The translations under genes and the position numbers were made by a program. A model generated the notes under the pieces. It did not search any database, had not been told where the DNA came from, and worked only from the letters and a program-made list of their open reading frames with translations. Shown piece by piece: positions 1-19,849 of a DNA stretch of 64,000 bases. The stretch lies in contig NIVC01001082.1 of the NCBI GenBank assembly GCA_002269645.1, forward strand, positions 1-64,000. Direction: 5' to 3'. The DNA comes from Macrostomum lignano (taxonomy: Eukaryota). Numbering within the stretch: the first letter of the stretch is position 1; the number at the start of each line of letters is the position of its first letter.

Positions 1-123
1 TCTCAAACATAATAATATTATATTCTTTATTCTCCAACATATTGGGTGTGAGATAATTAATCACATTAGAATCGGTTTTGAACGCAGCTCTCCATTTTTA
101 ATCTAAAAAAAATAACAAAAAAA

Positions 124-288
124 ATGAAAGACATTTATGTTTGTAATAAATGTAATGTGACTATGCACAGAGGGCAAACAGCAAACGGAGATATATATCA
201 TATGTGTTATTCATGTTCTAAAATATATCAATTTGAAAAAACAAAAAAGATTGAAAACTCATATTACTATTTTAAAATACAATTTTAA
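124..288 (+). CDS. Small zinc-ribbon protein (54 aa)
   Basis: Hand translation MKDIYVCNKC...HMCYSCSK... gives two CxxC pairs; shorter than any ORF in the supplied track. Confidence 0.5.
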   Translation: MKDIYVCNKCNVTMHRGQTANGDIYHMCYSCSKIYQFEKTKKIENSYYYFKIQF

Positions 289-821
289 GAAATCTTACAA
301 GAGACATTTCTGATCCAATTTTAATTCCCGGAAATAATGTTTATTTATATAATAACTTTTTCCATTTAAATAAAGGAAAGGGATTAAGTTCGAAAGACTC
401 TGAAAGGATTTTAATTTTAGTTGATATTATTTCAATTTTCTTATTCGAGAGAATACAAAGTTTATAAGGATAGGTAACATACCTAACGAAATGTTTGAAA
501 AAGTCATTGGAATTTTATGTATTGATAAAAATTTAAACCTAGATCAGAAGAGAGTTACCACTTTGGGAAGAATATATAACATATGCATTAGAAAAACTAA
601 ACAACCTGAAGTTCTACCGCACTTCCTGACGCGGGCTTTGTGCCCCAGTAGCAATAGTTTCAGGTTCGTAAATGCCTAATGTTTCTATCGGTGGAGCTTT
701 GGGTTTATCGAGTCTCAACTCTTTTAATTCCATATCGGTAAAAGTTTCAACATCTAAAATTCTATTTCTATCTTTTAAATATTTTTCATATAATCAACCG
801 CGGTTGATAATTCATGAATCG

Positions 822-1250
822 TTATCTCTCCGTCATCCAATATTTTTTGCACATATAAATATAATTGATTTTTATATTGTTTGCAACATCTCTTAAAGAT
901 TTATATTTTTCCTTTCTTTTTTTAAGATATAATTTAATTGCTAAAAGTATTGATAAGTTCCTGATCAATTCAAAACCTGATATTGAGCCAATTGAAATAC
1001 CTAAAAATAATTGAGATAAATTAAGAGTTGGAATAGATTGTAAAATACCTAAAACGATTACACATAACATTGATAAGCTTCCAAATCCAATATTGAAAAA
1101 GTCCATATTTCTTATATGGTTTGAAACTCTTCTTACTTTTTTAGCATATAAATCATAATCATAATTTATTCGATCAACATTACTCAACATCTGACCTTTA
1201 CGTTGGTTGAACCGGTCGCGTTCCCATTTATCTGCTTCAGATACCGACAT
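822..1250 (-). CDS. Hypothetical viral protein with two hydrophobic helices flanked by charged helical segments
   Basis: 142-aa ORF; hydrophobic stretches IGFGSLSMLCVIVLGIL and LFLGISIGSISGF...ILLAIKL. Confidence 0.6.
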   Translation of the reverse strand: MSVSEADKWERDRFNQRKGQMLSNVDRINYDYDLYAKKVRRVSNHIRNMDFFNIGFGSLSMLCVIVLGILQSIPTLNLSQLFLGISIGSISGFELIRNLSILLAIKLYLKKRKEKYKSLRDVANNIKINYIYMCKKYWMTER

Positions 1251-1560
1251 TCTCGTCTATTTTTAATAGCACCAAAATGAATTCCCACGCTCTTTGGGAT
1301 TTGCCCGAGCTTAATAGGTATTGTATTGGAGTGATTCTTTCTTTTTTCTCCCATTTAAATCCTATTTTCCAAAACTCTTGAAGTATAATATGATTTTTTA
1401 ATAACTTAATTAATTCTTGAAGCTTCTTATTATCCTGAACATTTACAGTACTAAATAAAAATTTGGTATGAGATTTGAATGTTTTTATATTTGATTCTTG
1501 TTTAGGAATAGGAATAATAACATTATTTTGCCGCATCGATGGAGTTCTACTAAAAGCCAT
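1237..1560 (-). CDS. Hypothetical viral protein (probable start MAFSRTPS at 1560)
   Basis: 3' part of track ORF 1237..1716; the upstream part overlaps the fiber C-terminus in another frame. Confidence 0.45.
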   Translation of the reverse strand: MAFSRTPSMRQNNVIIPIPKQESNIKTFKSHTKFLFSTVNVQDNKKLQELIKLLKNHIILQEFWKIGFKWEKKERITPIQYLLSSGKSQRAWEFILVLLKIDENVGI

Positions 1561-1591
1561 TTTATATAGAAATATTTTATATATAAATATT

Positions 1592-3633
1592 TTATATTTG
1601 AGTAGGAGGTTTTTCCAAATAAGCAGTAGAGGGAAAAACATAACCAAACGACGTACTACCACATACAACTGCGCCACGAATAAAATGTGCAGCATCCGCT
1701 CCAGTTCGAGCACCAAAACCCATAAGGGTTCCAGATTTATCTAAAGTTCCCCAAGTTCCACTATCATATGTGAAAACGTTCTGCCAATGAGGGTAAAAGA
1801 ATCACCAGCAACATTGTATGACTGTAATCGGTACCAAACCCTTTGATTTAAAATATTAACTTCAAATAAATGCCAATCGCCGTTATCAATATTAGCATAG
1901 GCTACAGTTTGATCCGCATCACTACTAACATCGTTACGAACCGTAGATCCGTCTGATTTTTTATTACTCCAAACAACTCCAAACCTATCATGCCACTCAC
2001 TTGCAAAAACTATCAATCCGGCGTCGGTTGATAATCCAGATCCAAATTCCGATGTTGGACGTTGGTGACAGTATGCATAAAACCAAACCGCATCTGCACC
2101 ATCTCCTGTAGCATTAGCAACTCGGAAAAAGAAAGACGCAGATATATTTTGAAAATGTGTGAAATTGAATTGTAAAGCACCACTTACTCCAGAAGTTTCA
2201 CGAGTAATTCTAGCGCCGTTTTGATAATCGATATAAGAAGCGTCACCAATTAAAGAACCGACTGGATATATATCTCCGGCGGTTGTTGGATTTTGATATC
2301 CAGACCAATTGCAAATTACTGGTTCGAACAAGGCCGCATCAATAGCAGGTATTCCATCCAATTTATTTTTATCGCTTCCAGACATTCTACCATTTGATGT
2401 TGGAGTAGCTAGCTGATCTACGTACGCTCGCGGAACTGCAGAAAGTATTTGAGTTGGCCAATTAAGATCTTGAATTTCAACACGGTGTTCAAATAATTGT
2501 ATTTGACGAACCTCGATAGGTTGTGTACCGGTACCACCAGTTGGGAAGAATACGCTATAATATTTCCAAAAATTAGTCGTTAAATTAGATAGAGCAAATG
2601 ATGTTGCTTGAACTGGTGATCCCGACGTAGTTAATGTTGTCCATGAATCGGTAGCAACATTTTTTGCGCGAACCGACCACCCGAGGGTATCTCAATTGTT
2701 TCACTGCCTGTAATTCTTAATTCAAATATTCTTCTATTATAACCTAAAAATTCAAATTGAATTTCCATATTGGTTGTGGTTCCGGTATTTGGTGACCATT
2801 GTGTCGCAAGGCTTCCATCTCCAACTCGAAAAGCTGTGTTGCCATTTTCAGATGCTGTAAGAACAACATCAGGATTTGAAGTATTTGATGTAAGCGGCGT
2901 GGTAAAAATATCGGCGTCGGTTGCATTAGCTCGCTCATTTACTTGGCCTAGAGTTATCGAGTCTGCGTTATCTGTTCCAAATAATAAATTTGTTAATTTA
3001 AAATTATTCATATTAATATTACCACTACGAGTGGCAACTTGATTATCGACATAGTTCTTATCAACCACTGAATCACTAGTTGTAATTGAAACATTTATAA
3101 TTCGGTTGTTGCTCATATCTAGGTTTCCGGTTGCGGTGGTTTGAACATAACGTGAATCAGAATCAGTTCGAGAATAAGAATCAGTTACATCTCTTTTTAA
3201 ATTTAATCCATTATCAACTTCGGTTTTGGTATAAGAATCGGCTACGTTCCGTTTCAAATTTAATGAATTATCAACTTCGGTTTTGGTATAAGAATCGGCT
3301 GTATTGCGTTTTAAATTTAATGAATTATCAACTCGTTTTGGTATAAGAATCGGCTGTATTGCGTTTTAAATTTAATGAATTATCAACTTCGGTTTTGGTA
3401 TAGGAATCGGCTACGTTCCGTTTCAGATTTAGTGAATCATCTATTTGAGTTTTGGTATAGGAATCTGCAACATTTCTTTTTAAATTTAATTTATTATCAA
3501 TTTCAGTTTTTTTATAACCTTCATCCTCATTAATATATCGATTATCTCCAAATGTAACACTTATTCCACCAGATGTGCCACCACCACCACTACTTGTTGT
3601 TCCGTTCCATGAGGGTGTTCCAGAAAATAACAT
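1592..3633 (-). pseudogene. Fiber/receptor-binding protein: 19-aa repeat shaft, discoidin(F5/8)-like domain, phage-tail-type motif, L-lectin/ConA-like head; about 3 frameshifts
   Basis: Joins ORFs 3328..3633, 2631..3257, 1741..2385 and the gaps between them. Repeats KTEVDNSLNLKRNVADSYT; ATPTSNGRMSGSDKNKLDGI; GDGADAVWFY; C-terminal GFGARTG...PPTQI* in a shifted frame. Confidence 0.75.
3170..3520. repeat. 57-bp coding tandem repeat (~6 units) in the fiber gene
   Basis: Unit approx. ttttaaatttaatgaattatcaacttcggttttggtataagaatcggctgtattgcg. Confidence 0.9.
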
Positions 3634-3657
3634 TTTTTACTGTCTATTTTATAGAGT

Positions 3658-4115
3658 CTAAAATCGCCCTAGATCGTCATCATGCTTTGCATGATATAAA
3701 TACTTCGGGGTTTCCTTCGAGTTATTAATCGAATTTAGTCGATATAAAAAATACAACGCCGCTTGCCCGCAATAACTTTTATCAAAGGTTTGAAATTGTT
3801 CGTGATGATCTCCACATAAACGATTTTTAGTATGATTAAATTTGTCTTTTATTTCCTGTAACGGAGGAAGCGCGTATGAATCAAAAAAATAAACAAGTTT
3901 AGGTTTGAATAAACTGCCGACCAATGAACACCATTTTCTTTTGTTGTTTCAATATTAACAATGAAAGATCCATATTGTGGTAAGTCTTTGATCTCATCTC
4001 GCATAACACATCTGAATGGTTTTATTTTTAACTGCCTCGCCCAATTTGTTAATTCGATATTGCTTGTTGTGTCCGTTCCATATCTTTGTTTAAAATCATC
4101 CCACGTCATGGTCAT
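3658..4115 (-). CDS. Adenain-like cysteine maturation protease (one frameshift near 3905)
   Basis: Catalytic motifs GVHW, YFFDSY and Q..DKSYCG are split between ORFs 3849..4115 and 3658..3924. Confidence 0.85.
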
Positions 4116-4116
4116 T

Positions 4117-4323
4117 TTATGTTCCTGAAAAACTCTTGGTTTTAGTTAGTTTCGTAGGTGTGGGTTTTAACAATTCCTTTCTTATTTTATCAGCTTGTAA
4201 CTGCCTTAATTTTGCTAGTTCTAGTTCGTAATTATCTTCAGCTTTTTTAACTTTTTCTGATTGTTTTTTTATTAAATTATTATTATCGTGCTTTGCACGC
4301 GAACATGTTGTTCGATTACCCAT
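4117..4323 (-). CDS. Small basic coiled-coil protein with a possible N-myristoylation start (MGNRTT)
   Basis: 68-aa ORF that fills the gap between penton and protease. Confidence 0.55.
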   Translation of the reverse strand: MGNRTTCSRAKHDNNNLIKKQSEKVKKAEDNYELELAKLRQLQADKIRKELLKPTPTKLTKTKSFSGT

Positions 4324-4333
4324 TTTTACAGTA

Positions 4334-5115
4334 CTAAACCTGTTTTATACGTAAAATTATTGTTATTGACTGCCCACCAAAACTTATTAATCTATCGCTT
4401 TCATCTACAATCCTAATATAAATTGATTGAACATTATATTGATTTAATGGGTAATATATTGGGGTTTGGGTGCAACAATCATTTTCTCTCCAATTGGAAC
4501 AGCAAGAAATGGGATTGAATAAATAATTCCACGTTGAACCAAAACTCCGTTATCGTCTGTTATATAACCGCCGTTTGAAATGTCGGTTGTTATATTAATT
4601 GTATTGACTCCGCCCTCAATTTTCCACGTATCACCGGTGCTTGATGTGGTAACTATTCGGGAATTAAATCCAAGTATGGTTCTGAGTGAATTTGCAATTG
4701 TGAAATCAACCTGATATCCGGATCCTAGTGATAGTGTGAATCTGCCAGACGGTAAATCAACACCTATAACAATTGCTCCTGCTACCCAATCACCATTAGT
4801 TGTTAATTCTCCTTCTATATAAGCATTCAAATCAGTATAGCTATACGCTCCTGGGTTAACGCTAAATGTTGTCCAATTGGCTCCGGAATCTTTAGAATAT
4901 CTAAATTGATTATTTGTTGCATTAATTAATTGAGGCATGTTGAAAACCGAAAATAGTATTAAACCTATTTGATAACTTAGGCTTTGATCAAGTTGTAATG
5001 GATCGCGCAATTGAATCCGTTGCTCGCTGGTTGTCATTATAAACTGTAATGTTGTACTAAATTTTGAATTAGTTCGATCTACCAATTGTTTTATAGTATT
5101 TAAATTTGTAGTCAT
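4334..5115 (-). CDS. Minor capsid protein (penton), one frameshift near 4450
   Basis: PLQLDQSLSYQIGL..NNQFRY..PGAYSYTDLNAYI; the shifted frame continues IYIRIVDESDRLISFGGQSITIILRIKQV*, typical of a Polinton minor capsid C-terminus. Confidence 0.8.
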
Positions 5116-5152
5116 TTTTATAGTGGGAAATTAATCGGACGAAGTCCGCATG

Positions 5153-5983
5153 CTATGCACGATCGAACGAAGTTCGCGACCCTATGGGGCGATCCTCTTC
5201 TTCCTCATTATCTTCTTTTATCAAATTTGTTAAAATTCTATGTTTCCTTTCTAACCTCGGATTGATATAAATATGTTTGTATTGGCTATCATCCCAAATT
5301 TTTTTACACATACTTTTAAATGGTTTTGCATCCAATCCGGGATTAAATCTAGCGTGAATATTTTGTAGATCATAGTTATCTAAATCAAACATTACACAAC
5401 AGCTAGCATTCTTTTTTATAATCGATTCTAATTCTCTAAAGGATTGAGTAAGATAAAAAGCTCCAATTCCATCTCCTCTACCACTAACAAAAATTTCCTT
5501 TTGTAATTCTTGATCACCGTCATTAATACAATCATCAAAAATAATTAGTGTTTTATCATGTTTTGGAATTTGATCATAGGCTAATCGGGTTGATACTCTA
5601 ACAGTTGGGGCGCGATCGGACGAAGTCCGCGACCCTTCGGGGCGATCGGTGATGTTTTCTGGCTGTTGTGCCATTGTTTTACATAAATCCTCAATGTCTG
5701 CTAGATTAAATCGCGGTTCGTCATCATCCTCATATTGCTCATATGCTCTTAACATTCTAAACAAGACATCTTTTTTTAATTTGTTTTTTAATCCATGTTT
5801 AAGAAATTCATAATATTTTATTCTAGGTTTATTAGTATAAATTATTAAATTATTATAGTCTAACATTCCATCTGTTGTTAATAAATCGTAAACAAAGTGT
5901 GTTTTTCCTTTACCTGATCCTCCGATTACTAAACAAAGAAAAGGATCATTTGGAAATATTTTATTGTGTTTTGCCTTTACCAT
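5153..5983 (-). CDS. A32/FtsK-like genome packaging ATPase
   Basis: Walker A GGSGKGKT, Walker B LIIFDD, then SGRG and LTQS motifs. Confidence 0.93.
   Translation of the reverse strand: MVKAKHNKIFPNDPFLCLVIGGSGKGKTHFVYDLLTTDGMLDYNNLIIYTNKPRIKYYEFLKHGLKNKLKKDVLFRMLRAYEQYEDDDEPRFNLADIEDLCKTMAQQPENITDRPEGSRTSSDRAPTVRVSTRLAYDQIPKHDKTLIIFDDCINDGDQELQKEIFVSGRGDGIGAFYLTQSFRELESIIKKNASCCVMFDLDNYDLQNIHARFNPGLDAKPFKSMCKKIWDDSQYKHIYINPRLERKHRILTNLIKEDNEEEEDRPIGSRTSFDRA
5160..5195. repeat. 36-bp double-hairpin cassette, copy 1
   Basis: cgatcgaacGAAgttcgcgaccctatggggcgatcc; a related single hairpin cggacGAAgtccg lies at 5136-5148. Confidence 0.8.
5613..5648. repeat. 36-bp double-hairpin cassette, copy 2 (inside the ATPase ORF)
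   Basis: cgatcggacGAAgtccgcgacccTTCggggcgatcg. Confidence 0.85.
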
Positions 5984-6034
5984 TTTTAAAGAAATAATTT
6001 AAATAGGTGCGACGGTCGGAGACCTGCACTCATT

Positions 6035-7500
6035 TTACAATGGCGCGTCCCGAACAATCGTGCCATCAGCTTTAGCAATTGACATATATTCCTCTAGAAA
6101 CAATACGTGGGCGTCATGCCTGATTACCGGTTTTATTAATCTCTAACATATAATTAAGTCCAATATTGGCTACGTTTTCTTTCTGTGCCGTTAGATCATA
6201 AACAACCACTGGATGAATGTTTAGAAACTCTGTGGGTGTGTACTGAGGGACGGCATACGCTTCATTTTTGGCATAATCTTGATAATATTTTATAAAATCA
6301 TTAACATTATTATTTGCAATATTTAGATTAAGAGGATCTTTAACCGGATAATATTGATCATCAACCTGCAGGCGGATATTCTGAACATTAAACTCGTTAA
6401 TTGCAGCAACTGCGTTGTCTGTTGCGGTGCTGCTTGTGCTGCTATGTCACCCGATTGAAGCCAATATAAATCCCCATTTGCTCTTTTACTCCTTCTATTT
6501 GTTATCTTAAACCAAACAAAAATATATCTCACCCGACGTTTTGATGTCAGTATTTGCCACTGGAATGAATCCTGATTGTTATTAATGGTTCGCATAAAGT
6601 GTCTACGATTCAAATAAAATATTTCCTGATCATGCGTTAACTGATTATCGATGTGTTTTAAAAGCGGGCTGTTACCTCAATAGTTGGTACGACTAATTGA
6701 ATTGAATCTATACGAACTGCTATATCGGTTGAAATTGAGGTTCCATAAAGTATCCTAGGCTGATATCCACCAGATATTTGCAACTGTATCCCAAATTTTA
6801 ATCCTTTCCATACCCGATTTGGTGAGAAAAACCCAAATAGTGGAAAGATTGAAAAGTCCTGCTCATATGCTGTTGCTGTGGTTAAAACCGCGACTGGGAA
6901 TTTATTCTGACGATCTATAAAACCAGTATTAATATCTTTTGTATTAGTCATAGTGGTTACAACTGGAACTATGTTTGTATTAAGGTAAACAATTAGCGCT
7001 GCAGTATCTGCACCGGCTGCGTTTTGTACATTAGGGAAAACTACTGCTTGCCGTTACCTTTATCCGGCATCCACCCAACATTATCACCAACTTGTTTTGA
7101 TAAATAAGTATAATTTAAATGTTTCAAAACTCCATTAATCTCTGCGGGGTTTGATGATGTCTCAACCTCAGCACCATTAACAGTTAGTTGAGCTTGGGAA
7201 AAACATTTATAAAACCAATCATTTTCATTATTATTCCGGATCGATCTGCGATATCTCCGCCTGCAAGAGCAGTTCCATCATTTCTAGTATACAACCATCT
7301 AACGCGGAAAAACGCATTTTTCATATCCAATATAGTGTTGGTTGCGCCGATGTCAAAAGTTACCGTTCCAGTAGTAAAGTTATTTGAATTATCACTTGTT
7401 GGTAGGGTATAATTTAAATCTTTGCTCTGACCTCATTAATATACTGTCGGTGCTTTTTGAAATGAAATTTATCACTCCACATAGTTTTTGTTTCAGCCAT
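6035..7500 (-). pseudogene. Double-jelly-roll major capsid protein with about 6 single-base frameshifts
   Basis: Reassembled from MAETKTMWSDKF... to ...DQYYPVKDPLNL..YYQDY..EFLNIHPVVVYDLTAQKE...IVRDAPL*; the C-terminus has the YYP/DL-Q-E signature of Polinton MCPs. Confidence 0.85.
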
Positions 7501-7534
7501 TTTTTTAAGTTAAAAAAGTTTTTTATGTTAAAAA

Positions 7535-8200
7535 ATGAGTCAATTTATGGACGTTGATGGAGAGTTAGCGATTTATAAAGAGAAGCAAAGATATTCTGAT
7601 TTTGTTAGAAATTTACAAAAAAGAAAGTTAGGAATACAATTAGCGGGTGAAAGATTTGCTGCTCCTTTTGTTAATCCTATTACTGGGAAAATTAGTGAAC
7701 TAGAAAAAACAGATAAAGATCTTCTGGAAAAAATTGCTAAAAATACGGAGCCAAAAGAGGATGAAATTTTGGATGAGCCGCCTGCTTATGATGTTGATCA
7801 AGCACAATTGAGAATTGCAGAGATTAGACGTGCAGAGCGGGGCGATCGGGAACAATATCCAAGAGTACCAGCTAGTATTGCTGCGACAGATTTAGGTAAT
7901 AATAATTATCGAATTGGTGGAGTTGATAAAAATCGAAATGAACTATATAGAGAATTGGGTGGAGCATATAATATTGTTATGAACCCTAGGGTAAAATTTA
8001 ACCCTGATTTATATACTAGGGATGAATTAATAAGTGCTAGAATTTTTTATGATGAGTTAGGAGGAGCTGTTAAAAATACCAGCTTGTATAAAAGGATTGT
8101 TAATTCTATAAATAACAAACCGGCTGTTGGAGAAGGATTTAAAACTCCTAGAAAACTTGTTTTAGCTGCCGCGAAAGCTGCTGGACATACTGGTGTTTAA
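7535..8200 (+). CDS. Hypothetical Polinton protein (221 aa; possible core protein)
   Basis: Intact ORF divergent from the MCP, with viral codon usage. Confidence 0.7.
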   Translation: MSQFMDVDGELAIYKEKQRYSDFVRNLQKRKLGIQLAGERFAAPFVNPITGKISELEKTDKDLLEKIAKNTEPKEDEILDEPPAYDVDQAQLRIAEIRRAERGDREQYPRVPASIAATDLGNNNYRIGGVDKNRNELYRELGGAYNIVMNPRVKFNPDLYTRDELISARIFYDELGGAVKNTSLYKRIVNSINNKPAVGEGFKTPRKLVLAAAKAAGHTGV

Positions 8201-8227
8201 TTAATTGTTAAATTTATTTTTTATAAA

Positions 8228-8830
8228 ATGGAAACTAATAAGATTTGTACTAAGTGTAAACAAGAAAAACCGATGACAAAAGAATTTTATTTTTGGAGAA
8301 ATGATTCAAAAAAATTTAGAAATGATTGTCGATCTTGTCATAATACCTCATCTGCTATTTGGATAAAAAACAATAAAGATAAATGGAATGAATATAGAAA
8401 AAATAAGTATCACACTGATGATAATTACAAACATATTGTTTTAATTAGAAATAGAATAAATTGGGCGTTGAAAAATTTTAATGACAAGGACTATATCTCA
8501 TATCTTGGTTGCACAAAAGAATTCTTTTTTGATTGGTTAAATTTCACAAGAAATTATTATGTATCAAAAGATTATACTGGAAAGTTAGATATTGATCATT
8601 TCATTCCCGCTTCTTCGTTTAGTTACAAAGATGAAGATCAGATGAAAAAGTCTGAACATTGGACAAATAAAAGATACTTAACTAGCGTAGATAATAACTA
8701 TAAAAAAGTTAAACAACCAACCATTGAAGAGTTTGCAAAACAATTGGTGCTTTCATGTATTTTTAAGGCTATTAAAAATGAGCAACCGAACGAAGTTCGC
8801 GTTCCTTCGGAACGATCAAATAGTGTTTGA
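8228..8830 (+). CDS. HNH (endonuclease VII-like, giant-virus type) endonuclease with N-terminal zinc finger
   Basis: CTKC...CRSC zinc finger; YLGCT; IDHFIPASSF...HWTN..L..DN..K HNH core. Confidence 0.85.
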   Translation: METNKICTKCKQEKPMTKEFYFWRNDSKKFRNDCRSCHNTSSAIWIKNNKDKWNEYRKNKYHTDDNYKHIVLIRNRINWALKNFNDKDYISYLGCTKEFFFDWLNFTRNYYVSKDYTGKLDIDHFIPASSFSYKDEDQMKKSEHWTNKRYLTSVDNNYKKVKQPTIEEFAKQLVLSCIFKAIKNEQPNEVRVPSERSNSV

Positions 8831-10388
8831 AGGAGGATTGTTAGATGTTCAAAAAGGATTAACAAGCTTACCACCAATCTTTACTACTGGTAAATATACA
8901 GGGGAACTACACCTACCATCAATGAACTTCACAGGTTAACCCGTGGCCTGAGTGGTAGAAGCAAAGCTACTGCTAGTCACTATTAGTGGCGATGTCTCCA
9001 AATTGCGTGAAACCCGTCATACAGCTTCAAGTACCACTTCAATTGAGAAATCTTTTGAAGGAACAGAGGTAACTCCTCTTCCCAAAGGTAAAAAGCTTGA
9101 AGACACGGTGGCAATGCGCAGCCAAGCTCCTAAGTATTTTAAATATAAGGAGAAGGTTCAGAGAGCAGACGGAGATGGGCGGTAATTATCGCCGCTTAAG
9201 GTGTGCTCCAGCCTCTTTCGAAAGATTGAGGGTAAACTACCCGGCACTCGCTTAGATTTGAGATTAAATCCTGATGACACCCCAAAAGCCGATTCAATTC
9301 CAATAAATGGGATTGATTGGTTAGCATACTATCACGACTTAGCATATAGAGATGCTGACAAGAACCCGCCCGAGGAAGCATTAAGATTAAAACATGAAGC
9401 CGATCAAAAAATGATTCAAGGATTAGATAACTTGCAGGGATTATCGGTAGGGCAAAGATTAACTAGGTGGATGGTTAAAAAAATTCTACAATCTAAAGTT
9501 AAATTTGGTTTAGGAATTAATTACAACCAACATGGTAATAATTGTGTCGAATGTTTGTTATTAAGTGGTAGTGGGCTAAGTTATGATAAGGCTAAGGTTC
9601 TTCATAAAGAATATCGAAAACCTAAATTTTATAGAAAAATCATGAACTTCAAAAAGAATGAAATTTGGTATGCTGATTTAATGTCGATGCCGAACGAAAG
9701 AGGATATAAATATATCTTAACCATATTAGATGGTTTTACTCGATACGCGTGGGCTGTTCCTTTGAAATCCAAAAAAGGAGAGGATGTTGCTGCTGCTTTT
9801 AGAAGTCTTGGAGAAAAAAGCGAACGTTTGTGTGTTGACGAAGGAAAAGAATTTTACAATCCTCATATGTATAAATTATATCATTTTGAAAAAGGACAAG
9901 AAAGGAAAAAAGACGCGAATGGGGAGTATATTAATAAAATTTATTCTATTTATGGAGAGAGTAAAAACGCATTAATAGAAAGATTTAATAGAACTTTAGG
10001 TAAGAAATTATGGTTTCAGTTTAGTCTTAATGGTAACCAAAAATGGGTAAAAATATTACCAGACGTAGTGAAAGATTATAACAATTCATATCATTCGGCG
10101 ATAAAGATGACTCCTCAACAAGCTTATAACAATCCTGAAAACGTTAAAGTTACTTTTGGAAAATTTGAAAAAAATAAAAAGAAATCTTTTAAGGTTGGTG
10201 ATTCTGTTTATATCTATAAATGGAAAGATAAGTTTGAAAAAGGAAGAAAAGGATATTGGAAGATAAGTGAGAAATTTACTATCAGTAAAGTTTTAAATAC
10301 CAATCCTACAACCTATATAATTGCTGATAAGGACGGTGAAGAAATATTGGGTTCGTTTTATGAGAACCAACTAATATCAGCGAACTAA
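8778..10388 (+). CDS. PLA2 (parvovirus VP1u-like) - DDE/rve integrase fusion, 435 aa after splicing; exon 1 8778-8936, exon 2 9240-10388
   Basis: Exon 1 ends GELHLPSMNFTG and exon 2 starts PGTRL..PINGIDWLAYYHDLAY (Ca loop plus HDxxY). Integrase motifs WYADL, CVDEGKEF, IERFNRTL, YNNSYHS and GSFYENQL follow in the same frame. Confidence 0.9.
8783..8818. repeat. 36-bp double-hairpin cassette, copy 3 (HNH/PLA2 overlap)
   Basis: caaccgaacGAAgttcgcgttccTTCggaacgatca. Confidence 0.8.
8937..9239 (+). ncRNA. Group I self-splicing intron (IC-like architecture with P2, P2.1, P5abc), 303 nt, no ORF, terminal A
   Basis: P AAAUUGCGUGAAA 9000-9012; Q CAAUGCGCA 9112-9120; R GUUCAGAGAGCA 9156-9167; S UAAGGUGUGCUCC 9197-9209. 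P3 GUCUCC/GGAGAU; P7 G(A)GAGCA/UGCUCC; P1 CAGGU/GCCUG with a U.G pair at the splice site. Removal restores NFTG-PGT. Confidence 0.93.
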
Positions 10389-10398
10389 GTTCGAACAA

Positions 10399-10623
10399 TT
10401 ACTTGAGACAACATGGTAGTAAATTTTTTATAACAAACAAAAACAATATTATTACTATAATTGTTACTAATATTATTATTGACATTTGTTCAACTGTTAT
10501 CAAACTTAAATTTTCATTAAGTTCATTAATCGGCACATTTCCGATGTAGGAATAGTTTACCTTCATTTTTTTATATATATTTTTCACAATAAATGTCGTT
10601 TCTGTTATAGAATAATAGTTCAT
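10399..10623 (-). CDS. Small membrane protein (74 aa, C-terminal TM helix ending PCCLK)
   Basis: IIILVTIIVIILFLFVI hydrophobic run. Confidence 0.55.
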   Translation of the reverse strand: MNYYSITETTFIVKNIYKKMKVNYSYIGNVPINELNENLSLITVEQMSIIILVTIIVIILFLFVIKNLLPCCLK

Positions 10624-10639
10624 TTTTTAAATATTTTTT

Positions 10640-10954
10640 TCACATAAAAATTTCACTTTCATTCTCTGAATCACTGGTTTCATATGAACTATTTGTTGAT
10701 TCGGAATCTGTTGATCTAACCTCCCAATCATCCGAATTTAAATAATCTCCAAGTTGAAATATTAACTCACCCTCTTGTTCTAAATCATACATCTCATCTA
10801 GCTCTAATGGATAAAGTTTTAGGTCGTGCTTGTCGTCATATTTTAAATAAACTTCATCAATTATTCCATTCAAAATATGTTGTTTTATTATCTCTGCATT
10901 TTTAGCAACAGTCTCAAAAGTATCACTAACAGAAAAGGTGTAAACTCGGGTCAT
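10640..10954 (-). CDS. Hypothetical acidic viral protein (104 aa)
   Basis: Intact ORF with a Ser/Glu-rich tail. Confidence 0.6.
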   Translation of the reverse strand: MTRVYTFSVSDTFETVAKNAEIIKQHILNGIIDEVYLKYDDKHDLKLYPLELDEMYDLEQEGELIFQLGDYLNSDDWEVRSTDSESTNSSYETSDSENESEIFM

Positions 10955-11011
10955 TTTTAGTATCAGAAAAAGACCCTTCGCGCCTGCGGCGCGGGCAAGG
11001 GGTTATAGAGT

Positions 11012-11279
11012 AGTAGTATAGAAAAAGACGCTTCTAGATCAGACCTTATTTTAATGGCCGTTTGTAAGGTCTTAGGAGGGGGGACGCGAGGGGGGTGTTG
11101 GGGAGTGTTTGGAAGTGTTGGGAAGTGATTTTTATTGTTAGGGGTGATTATGGGTGATTAGATGTGTTAATGGTGTTTAGATGTGTTTTTTTATTTACCC
11201 CCCGTGTCCCCCCTCTAGACCCTTAAAACGGTCATTAAAAAAGTGCTCTGGGTCTAGAAGCGTCTTTTTCTATACTACT
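11012..11279. repeat. Polinton terminal region with an internal inverted copy of the terminus
   Basis: agtagtatagaaaaagacgcttctaga (11012-11038) is the exact reverse complement of 11253-11279, and the match extends imperfectly to about 80 bp. Confidence 0.9.
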
Positions 11280-13801: not shown

Positions 13802-15072
13802 GACAAACGGCGCATCTACCTATGCTCCGATCGGAACAACTCTCTAGAGCAAGGGTTCTGCTGGTTCGCCGTCTTTATTTTCAATAATTTTTCACTGCTG
13901 TCCGCCTGAAACCTATTTGCTCACGTGTCTCTCTCTCTCCTCTCTCCGGCCCCTCTAACGGCCGTTTTTCTCCTTTCCAACTTTTTGGAACTGTAAAGAA
14001 TTTCACAGCTCGAATGAGAAGTAAGAGAGAGAGAGCGGAGTGCTTGCAAAAGCGAGATATACAATAGTAATAGTGGCACAGGGCACAGTAGTTGCAGGCG
14101 ACCTATGAGGAACTTGTATAAGGACGAATGCAAATGCTATCCCTTTGCCACTATACCCGTGCCCCGCTCCCAACACAGCTGTTCCTACACTGCCATTGGT
14201 TTGCAAGCTTTGGGTCTATGCTGTATTGTTCTCTATTAGGGGCAGAGTCAGAGAGCTAAATAGAAGAAATCGATTGTGGGCGCGCTCTGAGTACGTGACA
14301 AGCAACCACTATATACTTAAACCCTTCTTGCTCCTTCGCCAATCTTTCGCTTCCTTCTCATAGCTGTTCGACGTTTAGCTTCGATCTTGCAAGTAGCTAA
14401 GGAGAAGTTGGTCGTAGAAAATTTTTGAGAAAAGGAAACTCACGTTTCAACTACTCTATTTCGTTATATTTGCTTAGTATAGGGAAGTCGTAGGCAGCTT
14501 GCAGCTCGCATACTTTCCTTGAATCTCGACTTGGCTCTGCTCGTGCAATTAACGGCTTAACGCCTTTGAGGGCCAACCTCCCTAAAGGTACAGTGAAGTG
14601 TACATGCCTAACGATAATTAAGTTAGGGCTCTTGGGGGTATGGGGTGGTTGCTGAGATGCCAAGGGTCAATTTCAATTGGAAATTATCGGTAGGCCAAGC
14701 CAAAGGTAGCAAAATTGTGGCAAAACAGTTGTCGTGATACAGTTAAATTTGAGAGAAAATGCACTAGAAAGATTAGAGCTGCCTGAATAACAATTAATCT
14801 ATCATAAAGCAACTGAGGCATAAAACTAAATGAGGCCGGATTTCAACGCAAAGCTTAACTTAGCTATTGTACATACAATAGGAAAGACTTTAAGTTAGCT
14901 TGGTTGGCAGTTTACAATAAATATTCCTGCCGGATCGAATCAAGACCAGAGTACCAATTCAAATGCAATAATATACTGGCTTCACTGCGCTTCACATGCT
15001 GGAGTGGAAATCGAAGGACCATAACTAGATGCTATTTTTAGAACTGCAAACGTCACAGGCCTGTAATAAAAG

Positions 15073-18000
15073 TTGACTTACTTGACTTAGCTGCAGGGGG
15101 GCGTCCGGCGGATGCAGCGAAAAGGCGGAGACCGCCCATTCCGCTAGCCCCTGGCGACCAATGGCTTCCGTCGAAGCGATGTCGCGCAGGGGAACCCGTC
15201 GGTCTGCAGCGCGGTCCTCCTCACCAGCGGTGGGGAAGAAATCAGCTCGTCCCGTGTCCCTAGGGTACCGGGCGAGCAGCGGGATGCTCACGGGCCTGCA
15301 AACGTCGGAAAGAACCGACATAGTGAGTGAGCCTGGCCCTGGTGAAAGCCGGGCAGTGGCAGATAAAGTGCTCGGCGTTTTCACTGCCTGAGCGGCAGAA
15401 GGGGCACCGCTCCTCGGGTACTTGGCCCTGAAGGAAGCGGTGGCGAGAGAAGCAGCCATGCCTGGAGAGGGCCATGCTGACTGCTCTGAGGACTCTGCGG
15501 TTGAGCCTGAGGAGGGCTCTACGCAGGTGAGGAGAGGGGCAGGGGACGGCCGCACGGGAATTGCCTACTATTCCGGGTGTCCTGCCACCTGTTGAGATGC
15601 TCGGAGTCAGTCCAGCGCTTAACGCGGGAATTGATCCCCGAGGCGGGCATCGGGGCCCCCGGGCCTGGCCCTAGCAGCGCGCCGGCGGAGCCAGCCTTGG
15701 CCAGCAGGTCAGCGCGCTCGTTGCCGAGGAAACCAGCGTGGCCCGGGATCCATCTGAGCTCCACCTGGTTGCCTAGCGCAAGCCCGTTGAGCTGGGCGTT
15801 GCAGTCCAGGACAGATCTGGACAGACAGGACAGACAGGACAGACATTGTCGAAGGCCCCCTCAATGTCCAGGAAAAGCGAGAGGGCAAAGCCGCTGCCAA
15901 GAACGGCCCTCTCCAGGAAGTCAACAATGACATGGAGGGCACTCTCGGTAGACCTGCCCGCGCGGAAGGCGTGCTGGTTCTGCGAGAGTGGAAAGGGCTT
16001 CAACACGACCGAAAGTAGTCGCCAAAGCACCAGTCTTTCGAGGAGCTTGAGGCAGAAAGATGTGAGGCTGATAGGCCTGAAGGCCTTCACCGATTGATAG
16101 TCTCTCTTTCCAGGCTTGGGGATAAAGACCACCCGGGCCTCTCTCCACGCAACTGGTACATAGCCCAGCTCCACACAAGCTCGGAGGAGACGACAGAGCA
16201 GGTCCAGGAAGCGTTGGTTTTTCACCGCCTCGTGCAAGAAAGCTGGGTAGATGCCGTCGGGCCCAGGCGCCTTGAACGGGTTAAAGGACCTTGCCGCTCT
16301 AATAATGCGGTCTTTGGTGATTATAGACTTCGCTAGGCCTTGCCCTCCAACGGTGTGGTCAGATAGGCCCTGCTGAGTCGGAGATTTAGGGAGGAGACTA
16401 TGGAGCTTTAGAGTTTCGTCAGAGCTCTCTGTGACCGAGCCATCAGGTCTGATCTTCACAACAGAGAGTTTAGAAAAACGGTCATTCGTGAGTGCCTTTA
16501 CCATGCGGGCTACGGGGCAAGAGCCCTCAAGCCCTTCGCAGTATTGGCGTCACTTGGCCGTCTTGGCCCTTCTGACTTGGCCCTTAAATTTGTGGATCGC
16601 ATGGGTATAGGCCTCTCTATCAGATGGGTCTTTGGTTTTGAGCGCTCGCCTTTGGAGGGTCCTGGCTCGGCACCGAAGGGCCCCGAGCTCTGGGTTCCAC
16701 CAGGGAGCAGATTTCTTGCCTTTGTAGGCCTTTAGAGGGCAGGCTACCTCAAAGGCAGTGGTGATCGCCCCGCCCAGGGAGGAGGCGAGATCATCCACAA
16801 CCCGGCAGTCAGAGAGGTCACTGGGGAGGTCAAGATCCCGAATGTCGCGGCTCAGCTTCGAGCCAAAGACGGCACAATCGGTATTCCTGACGTTCCTCGT
16901 GAGAGTGAGACCTCCTCCCACACTCGCCAGCCCGTAACTGTGGACAGAAGTCCGGGTGAGGCGATGGTGGTGTCGATGACTTCGGCCCACAGCCCGTTAT
17001 TAAACTTTGGTGCATTGCCCACGTTACAGAAGTTGAGGTTCGTGCTGCTGACGTAGGCCAGCTCCTCGCTTCTGTTGTTGGTGCTCTTGCTGCCCAAATG
17101 CAGGTGGTGCGCGTTCACATCCCCTGCAATGAGCAGTTCGAACCGGCGGGACGCGACGTAGTCAATGAGGTTGACTAGCGCGTCGCAGACTACTGGGGCA
17201 TCGCCTGGGAAATAGGCAGATGCTGCCAGCACGCGTTTATTGGGAAGGAGGTTATTGGTTTGAACAACACAGATGTCCCCGGTCGAGAGATCAGGTCTCA
17301 TTCATGCCTCAAAAGCTTTTGCAGCAAAGACCAGAGATCTTGGTGAGAGTCCGCCATGCAAAAGCAGTGGTAGTCAGATGGCACATTATTTGGCGTACCT
17401 TTAGTCATCCAGGGCTCCTGCACGAAAAACAGGCCCGGAAGCTGTTGCTCTGTCGTGCGCATCAGGTTGAATGACGCCGCCACGCAGTGCTGGGTGTTGA
17501 TCTGCAGACACCAGGTAGCCGCTGGCATCATTGCAGATCGGGCGTTGCAGCCGCCAGGAGTTCCTCCTCCTCCTCGGCGCTCACCAGCTTCGGGTCAGGG
17601 TCACCGGTGTCCATGGGCTCCTCTTCAACAAAAGGCCACTGGCCAGTCGATCGGAAGGCAGTAGGCAGCGTTCGCCGCCCTTCGCCCATCGGCTACGGGG
17701 TCCTCCGTCTCGGAGTGGCCCAATGCCCTGGAGCAGCCAGCCGCCTGGGCAGGCGGGTCCGTCTCCAGTCGGCCCTGCGGCCGAGGGGTTGGGCCCAGCT
17801 GAGACGTCCCCACCCTCCCTGGACGAGCTGCTGCGCCTGGGCGTCCCGGCGACCTCTCTCCTCAGCTGGGTGATTTTAGCGGTGCGGACCGCCTCAGCTG
17901 CGCGCTGGTACAGGCCGCGCCGTCTGGTGCTGCGCGCTTCTGCTAGTGCTGAATTCCTTCTGCTTTGAGCTCTAAGCGCATGGAACGAAACAGAACAGTA
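15073..18000 (-). mobile_element. Degenerate LOA/I-group non-LTR retrotransposon (APE - partial RT - RNase H - CCHC), 5'-truncated and internally deleted
   Basis: QINTQH, VQEPW, GDVNAHH, KAPGPDGI, FRPISLTSF, FLDIEGAFDNV, WIPGHAGFLGNERADLLAK, CPFC...HFICHC; short 3' tandem repeat ttgactta at 15073-15090. Confidence 0.9.
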
Positions 18001-18701: not shown

Positions 18702-19475
18702 TCACTCAGTGCGCAGGTACTTTGTCCACTGCAGCTTCTCCATTTCGTTGGCAGAGAAGTCGGAGCCGTCAAGCGGCAGGCTGGCGTCAAAGTAGGGCAG
18801 CAGGACGCACTGCCTCCTTGTCGGGTGCCAGTAGAATCCAACGCAGTCACCGAACTCGAACTCATAGCAGATCAGGGCGCAGTCTTCCAGGGTCTTGATG
18901 GCCGGCACTTTGATCCAACAGCCCGGGTCGGGCTGCTGAAACTGAGCGATTCTTACCAGCTCAAATTTTCCGTTGTTCCGCTTGGGGACTTTTCGATAGG
19001 CGGCGGTGATGTTAGAATAGCAGTAAAACACGTGCTTCTCAACACAATTCTCATCTCTCAACTGGATGCTCAGACCCATTATGGTAGCGCAGTCTTGCTT
19101 GCCACCAAGGTTGTTGGGCTCGGCTGGGTGAAAATCATTGCCGCTAACTGACGTAACCTGGCCGTCCTTGATCCAAACCCAGCCGTCTTTGTTAGTGCTC
19201 CTCTCATTCAGCGAGTCCACCAGTCCCACCCACCATCTCTGGCTAGAAAAGCCACCGCTGGCCTTCATGGCGTCGTACACGGGCTTGCTGATCATCTCCT
19301 GACCGTTCTGGTGGCAGGTCCTCACCGCATCGCAAAACGTCAGCAACTGACTGTAGTACTGGCTACACCATGGCTGCGCATCAATCTGAGTCATGCCAGG
19401 AGGACAAGCCGACTCAGCAGACATCGCAAGCTGAACAGCTGCCAAGAGCAAAGCTTTGAGCACTGAGGACTTCAT
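18702..19475 (-). CDS. Secreted C-type lectin (EPN motif) + PAN/apple domain protein, single exon
   Basis: Signal peptide MKSSVLKALLLAAVQLAMS; WWVGL, EPNN..QDC, DENC..FYC; C-terminal CALIC..CVGFYW..RQCVL. Confidence 0.85.
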   Translation of the reverse strand: MKSSVLKALLLAAVQLAMSAESACPPGMTQIDAQPWCSQYYSQLLTFCDAVRTCHQNGQEMISKPVYDAMKASGGFSSQRWWVGLVDSLNERSTNKDGWVWIKDGQVTSVSGNDFHPAEPNNLGGKQDCATIMGLSIQLRDENCVEKHVFYCYSNITAAYRKVPKRNNGKFELVRIAQFQQPDPGCWIKVPAIKTLEDCALICYEFEFGDCVGFYWHPTRRQCVLLPYFDASLPLDGSDFSANEMEKLQWTKYLRTE

Positions 19476-19849
19476 CACTGGGTGACTAAACTCAACCCAG
19501 CGAATAATTTTGATCAAGAGGTTTTATAGTCGCTGCAGGTGTATTGTTTCCTGTCACGAGTCTCCTGTCACGAGTCTGTCAAAACAGATGATTGACACCT
19601 CTGTCATAGAGCTGGCAGGCATTTTATTGCTGAGGCGTTACGATCGATTCTGACTGCCAACTTCCGTATGGAAGAAGCCATTGTTGGACTGCGTGCTCAT
19701 GGTTCACTCACTCATCGATTAACTTACTCATTTATCTTGCTCACTCATCTTGAGCAGATCCCAGTCAATAAATGGCTTGCTAATTCTATTCTTTAAAACG
19801 GCCCCTCCTGCCGATGTCTAATATATACCACTGCGAATCAATGAAACTA

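What the first reader, a model, noticed from the sequence alone, without database searches (positions are those of the whole stretch)
8937..9239. Complete group I ribozyme intron inside a protein gene of an animal Polinton virus
Seen: the PLA2 Ca-loop NFTG|PGT is split by 303 nt that fold into a full group I core. P1 is CAGGU(8932-36)/GCCUG(8946-50) with U.G at the 5' splice site. P2 is AGUGGUAG/CUACUGCU, P2.1 is GUCACU/AGUGGC, P3 is GUCUCC/GGAGAU and P4 is UGCGUG/UGCGCA. P5abc has a GAAA tetraloop at 9047-50, P6a is CUCCU/AGGAG, and P7 is G(A)GAGCA/UGCUCC with the canonical G-C guanosine-binding pair. P8 is at 9178-93, P9 has a GAAA loop, P9.0 is AG/CU, and P10 is CCGUG/CCCGG (4 of 5 pairs). 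The first three intron bases are an in-frame TAA. Established: group I introns occur in protist and fungal rDNA, organelles, bacteria, phages and giant viruses, but are essentially unknown in bilaterian nuclear protein-coding genes. Inference: a Polinton has carried a self-splicing ribozyme into an animal nuclear genome, and both PLA2 and the fused integrase depend on its splicing. I cannot check whether Polinton group I introns have already been reported.
Basis: partly seen in the sequence, partly recalled or inferred. Interest (0 to 1): 0.96.

Follow-up and report, generated by a model that had tools for sequence, protein, structure and literature searches.

The report
Group I intron in flatworm virus-like element
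A real 303-base self-splicing-type (group I) intron splits the phospholipase-integrase gene of a Polinton-like virus element in a flatworm genome assembly; it is a rare setting for such an intron, similar introns are already reported in protist relatives, and this copy may not splice.

Summary
Rfam's group I model matches window 8927-9230 (+) at 57.8 bits against a gathering score of 50, with E 4.5e-12 for the whole window. Rfam's fast-filter mode misses it.

Searched exon by exon, 53 of 120 homologues match exon 1 and exon 2 with no residue between them. That fixes the intron at 8937-9239, inside an invariant Gly|Pro-Gly-Thr of the PLA2 loop. No homologue has an insertion there, and no GT-AG intron reproduces the junction.

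The window is bases 1-64000 of a Macrostomum lignano (flatworm) contig, so the animal setting is supported by assembly contiguity only.

New points:
- Related gene calls show the same intron family at the same site. Interrupted and uninterrupted alleles occur within single 90%-identity clusters, which suggests a mobile intron.
- An intact HNH/Endo VII-type nuclease ORF (8228-8830) abuts exon 1. This recalls collaborative homing in cyanophages.
- One defining determinant of the 3' splice site is not met in this copy, so activity is doubtful.

Group I introns in protist Polinton-like viruses were reported in 2025. I class this as a new member of a known kind.

The parts
8937..9239 (+). Group I intron, 303 nt, with no family-matching ORF inside
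   Evidence: RF00028 at 57.8 bits. Bounds come from exon-by-exon protein homology: 53 homologues have 0 residues between the two exon matches. Internal ORFs have no Pfam match.
8932..8950 (+). P1 hairpin. The 5' splice site lies between 8936 and 8937 (U.G pair 8936/8946). The internal guide bases 8941-8945 can pair with 9240-9244 (P10).
   Evidence: P1 5/5, P10 4/5. The Rfam alignment places its conserved U.G pair here.
8951..8990 (+). Peripheral hairpins P2 and P2.1
   Evidence: 8/8 and 6/6 pairs.
8994..9209 (+). Catalytic core: P3, P4, P5, P6/P6a, P7 (pseudoknot with a one-base bulge) and P8
9019..9104 (+). P5abc-like three-way extension with a GAAA tetraloop at 9047-9050
9210..9239 (+). 3' region: P9.0 partner bases, the P9 hairpin with a GAAA loop, and a short tail up to the 3' splice site
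   Evidence: P9.0 2/2, P9 6 pairs around a small internal loop.
8778..8936 (+). Exon 1 of the PLA2-integrase gene (53 codons from the ATG). It ends on the invariant Gly of the loop motif.
   Evidence: BLASTP of exon 1 alone matches the N-terminal parts of more than 50 homologues and ends exactly where the exon 2 matches begin.
9240..10388 (+). Exon 2: the rest of the PLA2-like domain followed by a retroviral-type integrase, with its stop codon
   Evidence: Pfam rve at 32.8 bits. PF08398 is sub-threshold at 17.5 bits on exon 2 alone, but it is precomputed on most homologues. PFV integrase core matches at E 1e-6. The exon keeps all 70 residues shared by at least 90% of 62 homologues, including H32, D33, D146, D200 and E247.
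8228..8830 (+). Free-standing HNH / endonuclease VII-type nuclease ORF (200 aa). It overlaps the first 53 nt of exon 1 and ends 106 nt before the intron insertion site.
   Evidence: phrog_1035 'endonuclease VII' at E 3.4e-8, also hit by 35 of 36 aligned relatives. Four conserved Cys and a D-H...N...N motif. AlphaFold model pLDDT 91.6. Top Foldseek hits are all HNH nucleases but weak, E >= 0.1. Phage 'HNH endonuclease/endonuclease VII' CDS at 36% identity.
1..10960 (.). Low-GC (30-36%), gene-dense part of a Polinton-like virus element. It is cut on the left by the start of the contig, and its right end was not determined more closely than 10.96-12.5 kb.
5153..5983 (-). A32-type packaging ATPase gene of the element
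   Evidence: Pfam Pox_A32 at 28.9 bits.

Best explanation
Window 8937-9239 (+) is a genuine group I intron by descent, with no ORF of its own. It lies in phase 0 between the invariant Gly and Pro-Gly-Thr of the calcium-loop motif of a parvovirus-type PLA2 domain. That domain is fused to a retroviral-type integrase in a Polinton-like virus element, which occupies the first 11 kb or so of a Macrostomum lignano contig.

The intron has P1-P10 with P2, P2.1 and a P5abc-like extension. By the standard group I mechanism it would be removed through two guanosine-initiated transesterifications, which would restore the PLA2 loop. That step is inferred.

The intron belongs to a family that occupies this same codon boundary in related, mostly metagenomic, elements. 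Interrupted and uninterrupted alleles coexist among near-identical genes, which is the pattern of a mobile (homing) intron.

The intact HNH/Endo VII-type nuclease gene that abuts exon 1 is the likely partner. It would cut intron-less alleles near the insertion site, as in collaborative homing in cyanophages. This is inferred and not tested.

In this copy the exons look fully intact, but one defining determinant of the 3' splice site is not met. The copy may therefore be unable to complete splicing and may be a recently inactivated resident of the genome.
For: - Covariance-model score above the gathering score, and the only such hit in 64 kb.
- All helices pair.
- 53 of 120 homologues match both exons with no residue between. 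The junction columns are G 50/50, P 50/50, G 46/50 and T 50/50.
- Gene calls P0002 and P0043 begin with 13 residues. Twelve of these equal the reading of window 9201-9239, although identity over exon 2 is only 59%.
- P0282 reads 60 residues back through its own intron. These align with window 8952-9182 read in the same frame, at score 62 with 0 of 500 shuffles reaching it.
- Within single 90% clusters there are interrupted calls (P0002; P0008, P0282) and uninterrupted ones (P0274; P0283).
- The nuclease ORF is assigned.
- Exon 2 keeps every highly conserved residue.
- The host assembly is identified.
Against: - There is no RNA evidence of splicing.
- One 3' splice-site determinant is not met in this copy.
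- Covariation could not be tested, because no DNA of relatives was fetched.
- The intron in relatives is inferred from gene calls, not read as DNA.
- The link between nuclease and intron rests on adjacency in a single copy.
- Foldseek and PDB support for the nuclease fold is weak.
- Pfam does not cover the nuclease.
Confidence: 0.8

Rival explanations
1. One reading: the intron is active in this copy. It self-splices from nuclear transcripts of the flatworm, so that a working PLA2-integrase is made.
For: - The core is complete and P1, P9.0 and P10 are in register with the homology junction.
- The exons are intact.
- The nuclease ORF is intact.
Against: - One defining 3' splice-site determinant is not met.
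- At least one other gene of the element looks interrupted.
- There are no expression data.
- No protein at least 90% identical to this gene, spliced or not, came back from the protein collection.
Confidence: 0.15
2. The element is not part of the flatworm genome. It would belong to a virus of a protist in the culture (for example the diatom food) and be joined to flatworm DNA by misassembly at the contig end.
For: - The element sits at the very start of the contig.
- Its GC content (30-36%) differs from the flank.
- Its closest relatives are all from metagenome assemblies.
- Group I introns are so far reported only in protist Polinton-like viruses.
Against: - The sequence is continuous from the element into repeat-rich host DNA with a LINE and a C-type lectin ORF.
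- An identical host gene lies at a compatible distance from the start of a second contig. I did not read that flank.
Confidence: 0.2
3. The interruption is removed by the host spliceosome, and the ribozyme-like fold is incidental or vestigial.
For: Two in-frame GT...AG combinations leave an open reading frame.
Against: - Neither combination reproduces the junction seen in 53 homologues.
- Each would delete at least the invariant Pro-Gly-Thr-x-Leu of the PLA2 loop motif.
- The covariance-model score is far beyond chance.
Confidence: 0.03
4. The match is a chance resemblance, and the 303 nt are an unrelated insertion.
For: - Rfam's standard fast-filter pipeline reports nothing.
- The fold z-score is only -2.0.
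Against: - The score is 57.8 bits with E 4.5e-12 over the full model.
- Every core helix is present.
- The conserved core is shared with the interrupted relatives.
Confidence: 0.02

Closest known systems
Group I introns (RF00028) in endogenous Polinton-like viruses of protists: Rhodomonas lacustris cluster C3/GKS1, Paulinella micropora and Desmodesmus armatus (PMC12220804)
   Same: Same RNA family, similar size (309-376 bp there), and the same kind of carrier. The carrier is a PLV with rve integrase and the morphogenetic gene module. That paper also describes a short gene call of about 50 aa at the intron.
   Different: Here the carrier lies in an animal genome assembly. The interrupted gene is identified as a PLA2-integrase fusion and the exact insertion site is defined. 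A free-standing nuclease gene lies next to it. Whether the two intron sets are homologous was not tested, because no DNA was fetched.
ORF-less psbA group I intron plus the free-standing endonuclease F-CphI of cyanophage S-PM2, i.e. collaborative homing (PMC6083498; Zeng et al. 2009 and Bonocora & Shub 2009 as cited in PMC11296320)
   Same: An intron without its own endonuclease gene lies next to a free-standing nuclease gene with Endo VII/HNH-type catalytic residues.
   Different: F-CphI did not come back as a hit, so membership of its DHHRN family is not shown. Cleavage of the intron-less site is untested. The carrier here is a eukaryotic virus-like element.
Group I introns in protein-coding genes of giant viruses (chloroviruses, mimiviruses). 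This is from my own knowledge; PMC3671162 mentions self-splicing introns in the giant-virus mobilome.
   Same: A group I intron in a protein-coding gene of a eukaryotic DNA virus.
   Different: The virus class, host and target gene all differ.
Nuclear rDNA group I introns of the Tetrahymena type (textbook knowledge)
   Same: The peripheral architecture is shared: P2, P2.1, a P5abc-like extension and GNRA loops on P5b and P9.
   Different: Those sit in Pol I rRNA genes of protists and fungi. The subgroup was not assigned here because no subgroup models were at hand. This intron has only a single P9 hairpin.
PLA2-like virion genes of Polintons and adintoviruses, PLA2X (PMC8502044, PMC3671162)
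   Same: A parvovirus-type PLA2 domain (PF08398) in a Polinton-class element associated with animals.
   Different: Here the PLA2 domain is fused to the integrase, not to a pX-like tail. That fusion is common among the 455 homologues.

Membership tests
Group I intron (Rfam RF00028) | Covariance-model score at or above the curated gathering score | tested here: met
   57.8 bits against 50, over the full model, with E 4.5e-12 for 64 kb. The hit is missed by the fast-filter mode.
Group I intron (Rfam RF00028) | P1 with a U.G pair at the 5' splice site, formed with an internal guide sequence | tested here: met
   8932-8936 pairs with 8946-8950 at 5/5, and the U.G pair is 8936/8946.
Group I intron (Rfam RF00028) | Core helices P3-P8, including the P3/P7 pseudoknot and a G-C pair at the guanosine-binding position of P7 | tested here: met
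   All helices pair in this one sequence.
Group I intron (Rfam RF00028) | Helices supported by compensatory changes among relatives | not tested
   This needs DNA of relatives, and fetching it was left out under the bar on DNA of animal viruses.
Group I intron (Rfam RF00028) | Canonical 3' splice-site determinants (P9.0, terminal nucleotide rule, P10) | tested here: not met
P9.0 is 2/2 and P10 is 4/5, in register with the homology junction.
Group I intron (Rfam RF00028) | Removal restores an uninterrupted, conserved reading frame | tested here: met
   Exon-by-exon BLASTP finds 53 homologues with 0 residues between the exon matches. The junction falls in invariant columns.
Group I intron (Rfam RF00028) | Self-splicing activity | not testable with these tools
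   No RNA data are at hand.
Mobile intron with a free-standing homing endonuclease (collaborative homing) | Intron-plus and intron-minus alleles among close relatives | tested here: met
   At the level of gene calls only. Clusters at 90% identity hold both P0002 and P0274, and both P0008/P0282 and P0283.
Mobile intron with a free-standing homing endonuclease (collaborative homing) | Nuclease gene next to the intron-bearing gene, with intact catalytic residues | tested here: met
   ORF 8228-8830 matches phrog_1035 and has conserved Cys4 and D-H...N...N residues.
Mobile intron with a free-standing homing endonuclease (collaborative homing) | The nuclease cuts the intron-less allele at or near the insertion site, and its gene co-occurs with the intron | not tested
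   Co-occurrence needs DNA of relatives, which was left out. Cleavage is not testable here.
Polinton/Maverick in the strict sense | Retroviral-type integrase | tested here: met
   Pfam rve and the PFV integrase core.
Polinton/Maverick in the strict sense | [quoted passage not shown] | tested here: inconclusive
   None is found in window 1-11 kb, but the element is cut by the contig start.
Polinton/Maverick in the strict sense | Packaging ATPase, capsid proteins and maturation protease | tested here: inconclusive
   The A32-type ATPase is found. Capsid and protease genes are not recognised by Pfam or PHROGs.
Polinton/Maverick in the strict sense | Terminal inverted repeats and target-site duplication | not testable with these tools
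   At most one end of the element is in the window.
Parvovirus-type PLA2 domain (Pfam PF08398) | Profile match above the curated cut-off | tested here: inconclusive
   Exon 2 alone scores 17.5 bits against 23.9. The joined product was not searched. Most homologues carry PF08398.
Parvovirus-type PLA2 domain (Pfam PF08398) | Conserved loop motif and His-Asp pair | tested here: met
   The loop columns are invariant across the junction. H32 and D33 of exon 2 are shared by 98% and 97% of homologues.

The most novel reading that the evidence does not exclude
A family of group I ribozymes lives in Polinton-like viruses that infect or colonise animals. It would be transcribed as part of a nuclear, protein-coding, presumably Pol II message in a bilaterian, splice itself out to rebuild a PLA2-integrase, and spread between virus genomes with the help of the neighbouring HNH/Endo VII-type nuclease. 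That would be the first group I intron system working in an animal nucleus.
Probability: 0.2. Interest if true: 0.85.

Novelty: new member of a known kind. Interest (0 to 1): 0.6.

Why it matters
Group I introns are known from rDNA of protists and fungi, organelles, bacteria, phages and giant viruses. Since 2025 they are also known from Polinton-like viruses of protists. To my knowledge, none is known in a nuclear protein-coding gene of a bilaterian.

This locus places one, with its exact insertion site and a candidate homing nuclease, in a flatworm assembly. If integration and splicing were confirmed, it would show that virus-like elements can carry self-splicing ribozymes into animal nuclei. 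It would also give a natural case of a ribozyme acting on a presumably Pol II-made message in an animal.

Two results stand even if this copy is inert. The intron family targets one invariant codon boundary of a widespread PLA2-integrase gene, and standard Rfam annotation misses it. Such introns may therefore be under-counted in eukaryotic virus-like elements. The short 'orphan' genes reported beside PLV introns may be first exons.

Tried and rejected
- A 3' splice site at the end of the Rfam match (9230) was rejected. It would add three residues inside a motif where 53 homologues have no indel, and P10 would not form.
- Spliceosomal GT/GC...AG introns were rejected. None gives the homology junction.
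- A word-based protein search with exon 1 alone found no candidate, so that search was wasted.
- Searching the host transporter for named relatives returned only itself. Look-up of a second host ORF found nothing on record. The source was then identified through the transporter gene fetched with a 50-nt flank.
- blastn of the intron against phages gave only weak partial hits, E 0.3. The best one lies between two DNA-polymerase CDS pieces of Flavobacterium phage FpV21, but Rfam finds nothing there at E <= 0.001, so I dropped this lead.
- The nuclease has no Pfam match, no direct PDB sequence match, and only a weak profile hit to Hpy99I, E 0.27.
- The supplement of PMC12220804 held as text has no intron table to compare with.
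- There is no second copy of the element or of the intron in the window.

Full report
**Observation.** In 'evalue' mode Rfam's Intron_gpI model (RF00028) matches 8927-9230 over the whole model. The score is 57.8 bits against a gathering score of 50, with E 5.7e-14 on 801 nt and 4.5e-12 on all 64 kb, where it is the only strong hit. In 'gathering' mode, which uses Rfam's fast filters, nothing is reported on 64 kb or on 2 kb. This is probably because the long P2/P2.1 and P5abc insertions break the filter stage. A routine annotation would therefore miss this intron.

P1 is 5/5 with U.G at 8936/8946. P2 is 8/8, P2.1 6/6, P3 6/6 and P4 6/6. There is a three-way P5abc-like extension with a GAAA loop. 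P6a is 5/5. P7 is 5/5 plus an outer G-C after a one-base bulge. P8 is 6/6, P9 has a GAAA loop, P9.0 is 2/2 and P10 is 4/5. The first three intron bases are an in-frame TAA. The thermodynamic fold recovers most of these helices, with z = -2.0.

**Boundaries.** Exon 2 (9240-10385) has 455 homologues. Most carry PF08398 (PLA2-like) plus PF00665 (rve). Among the 120 listed, 53 match both exon 1 (8778-8936) and exon 2 with no residue between the two matches. None has an insertion there. In 50 of them the columns around the junction are G 50/50 | P 50/50, G 46/50, T 50/50. This fixes the interruption at 8936|9240, in phase 0, inside the calcium-loop motif. The alternative end at 9230 would add three residues and was rejected. 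No GT/GC...AG intron reproduces the junction, and the open ones would delete the invariant residues.

**Departure from the rule.** P9.0 and P10 are in register with this junction. However, one defining determinant of a group I 3' splice site is not met in this copy. Failure of the second splicing step would leave the PLA2-integrase gene of a virus-like element of an animal broken. I therefore count it (one departure) and give neither its place nor the change that would undo it.

**The gene.** Exon 2 encodes the rest of a parvovirus-type PLA2 domain followed by a retroviral-type integrase. PF08398 scores 17.5 bits on exon 2 alone, which is below the cut-off. The integrase is supported by Pfam rve and by the PFV integrase core at E 1e-6. 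Exon 2 keeps all 70 residues that at least 90% of 62 full-length homologues share. These include H32 and D33 of the PLA2 part and D146, D200 and E247 of the integrase. Apart from the intron, the gene shows no decay.

**Setting.**
- Window 1 to about 10,960 is low-GC (30-36%) and gene-dense.
- It holds an A32-type ATPase, fibre-like repeat proteins and the genes above.
- No polymerase is seen.
- Look-up of the neighbouring host transporter gene with a 50-nt flank shows that the window is bases 1-64000 of contig NIVC01001082.1 of assembly GCA_002269645.1. That assembly is Macrostomum lignano Mlig_3_7 (PMC10733133). The element is therefore cut by the contig start.
- The flank carries a degraded LINE, a C-type lectin ORF and many minisatellites.

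So the 'animal' claim is supported by provenance and contiguity, but integration is not proven.

**Relatives, from proteins only.**
- Gene calls P0002 and P0043 start with 13 residues. Twelve of them equal the reading of window 9201-9239, although identity over exon 2 is 59%. The gene callers evidently started inside a homologous intron.
- P0008, P0011, P0026, P0034 and several cluster mates start exactly at the junction.
- P0282 reads 60 residues back through its intron. These align with window 8952-9182 read in the same frame, at score 62 with 0 of 500 shuffles reaching it. This shows the same ribozyme core in a more distant cluster.
- Within single 90%-identity clusters there are interrupted calls (P0002; P0008, P0282) and uninterrupted ones (P0274; P0283).

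This presence/absence pattern at one fixed site is what a homing intron leaves behind.

**A candidate partner.** ORF 8228-8830 (+) overlaps the start of exon 1 and ends 106 nt before the insertion site.
- It matches PHROG 'endonuclease VII' and 'HNH endonuclease' families.
- It has 3,671 representative relatives.
- It keeps four Cys and a D-H...N...N motif.
- 35 of 36 aligned relatives hit phrog_1035.
- The structure model is confident (pLDDT 91.6). Its best PDB neighbours are all HNH nucleases, though weakly, at E >= 0.1.
- Phage CDSs annotated as HNH endonuclease or endonuclease VII match at 36% identity.
- The intron itself has no recognisable ORF.

An ORF-less intron beside a free-standing Endo VII-motif nuclease is the arrangement of the psbA intron and F-CphI in cyanophage S-PM2 (PMC6083498). 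I propose the same collaborative homing here, as inference only.

[quoted passage not shown] PLA2 domains are known in Polintons and adintoviruses (PMC8502044, PMC3671162). My searches found no report of a group I intron in an animal-associated Polinton-like element, nor of this insertion site. That is absence in a limited library, not proof. I class the finding as a new member of a known kind.

**Left out.** The element lies in an animal assembly, and I could not tell whether the metagenomic relatives are animal viruses. Covariation, nuclease-intron co-occurrence and the 3' ends of other copies therefore stay untested. I took no contig in this work for human.

- Two early notebook entries state the 3' departure explicitly. 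They were written before I saw that it counts as a break. They are left as they are and not repeated here.
- In my working I twice recalled short motifs from memory: a parvovirus PLA2-loop motif and a tetraloop-receptor motif.

Noticed in passing
window 8228-8830 (+): An intact HNH/endonuclease VII-type nuclease ORF lies directly upstream of the intron-bearing gene and overlaps it. It is a candidate free-standing homing endonuclease.
   Followed up: yes
window 8927-9230: Rfam's standard 'gathering' pipeline with fast filters misses this intron, although its score exceeds the gathering score (against 3 and 57). Such introns may be under-annotated.
   Followed up: yes
window 3174-3517 (- strand ORFs 2631-3633): Six tandem copies of a 57-nt unit (83% matches) encode a repeated 19-residue motif in fibre-like proteins. 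A neighbouring ORF has a PHROG tail-fibre match.
   Followed up: partly
window 3658-4115 (-): Two overlapping 88-aa ORFs in different frames read like one gene interrupted once by a frame change. No family was recognised. An indel error of the long-read assembly cannot be excluded.
   Followed up: partly
window 5984-7535 (-): This 1.5-kb stretch lies between the ATPase gene and the divergent genes, where a capsid gene would be expected. It holds only ORFs of up to 97 aa in more than one frame, with no family hit. Whether it is broken, spliced or misassembled was not resolved.
   Followed up: partly
window 11012-11093 / 11198-11279: An 82-nt inverted repeat (82% identity) sits in a G-rich stretch just past the last ORF of the element. 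It may be an end structure of the element or a small foldback insertion.
   Followed up: no
L001 (NIVC01003768.1, 15682-17011) and L002: An identical copy of the host transporter gene lies on a second, 24-kb contig at a distance from its start that would fit a sister copy of the element. The flank was not read.
   Followed up: no
window 15025-17301 (-) and 18702-19517 (-): A degraded non-LTR retrotransposon (APE endonuclease and RVT_1 pieces) and a C-type lectin ORF lie in the host flank.
   Followed up: partly
window 19.8-22.2, 29.8-33.1, 34.6-47.9 and 58.5-62.9 kb: The host part is packed with minisatellites (20-70-nt units, 10-45 copies) and CT-rich simple repeats. These explain the extreme GC skew and many of the long 'ORFs'.
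   Followed up: partly
L003 1501-1550 (Flavobacterium phage FpV21): A weak 50-nt similarity to the P4-P7 part of the intron falls in a gap between two DNA-polymerase CDS pieces that also holds a 221-aa ORF. This looks like an unannotated intron, but Rfam gives nothing at E <= 0.001.
   Followed up: partly
window 56997-57364 (+): A sub-threshold match to a plant miRNA family (MIR5048), at 30.7 bits against a gathering score of 160, is almost certainly chance.
   Followed up: no
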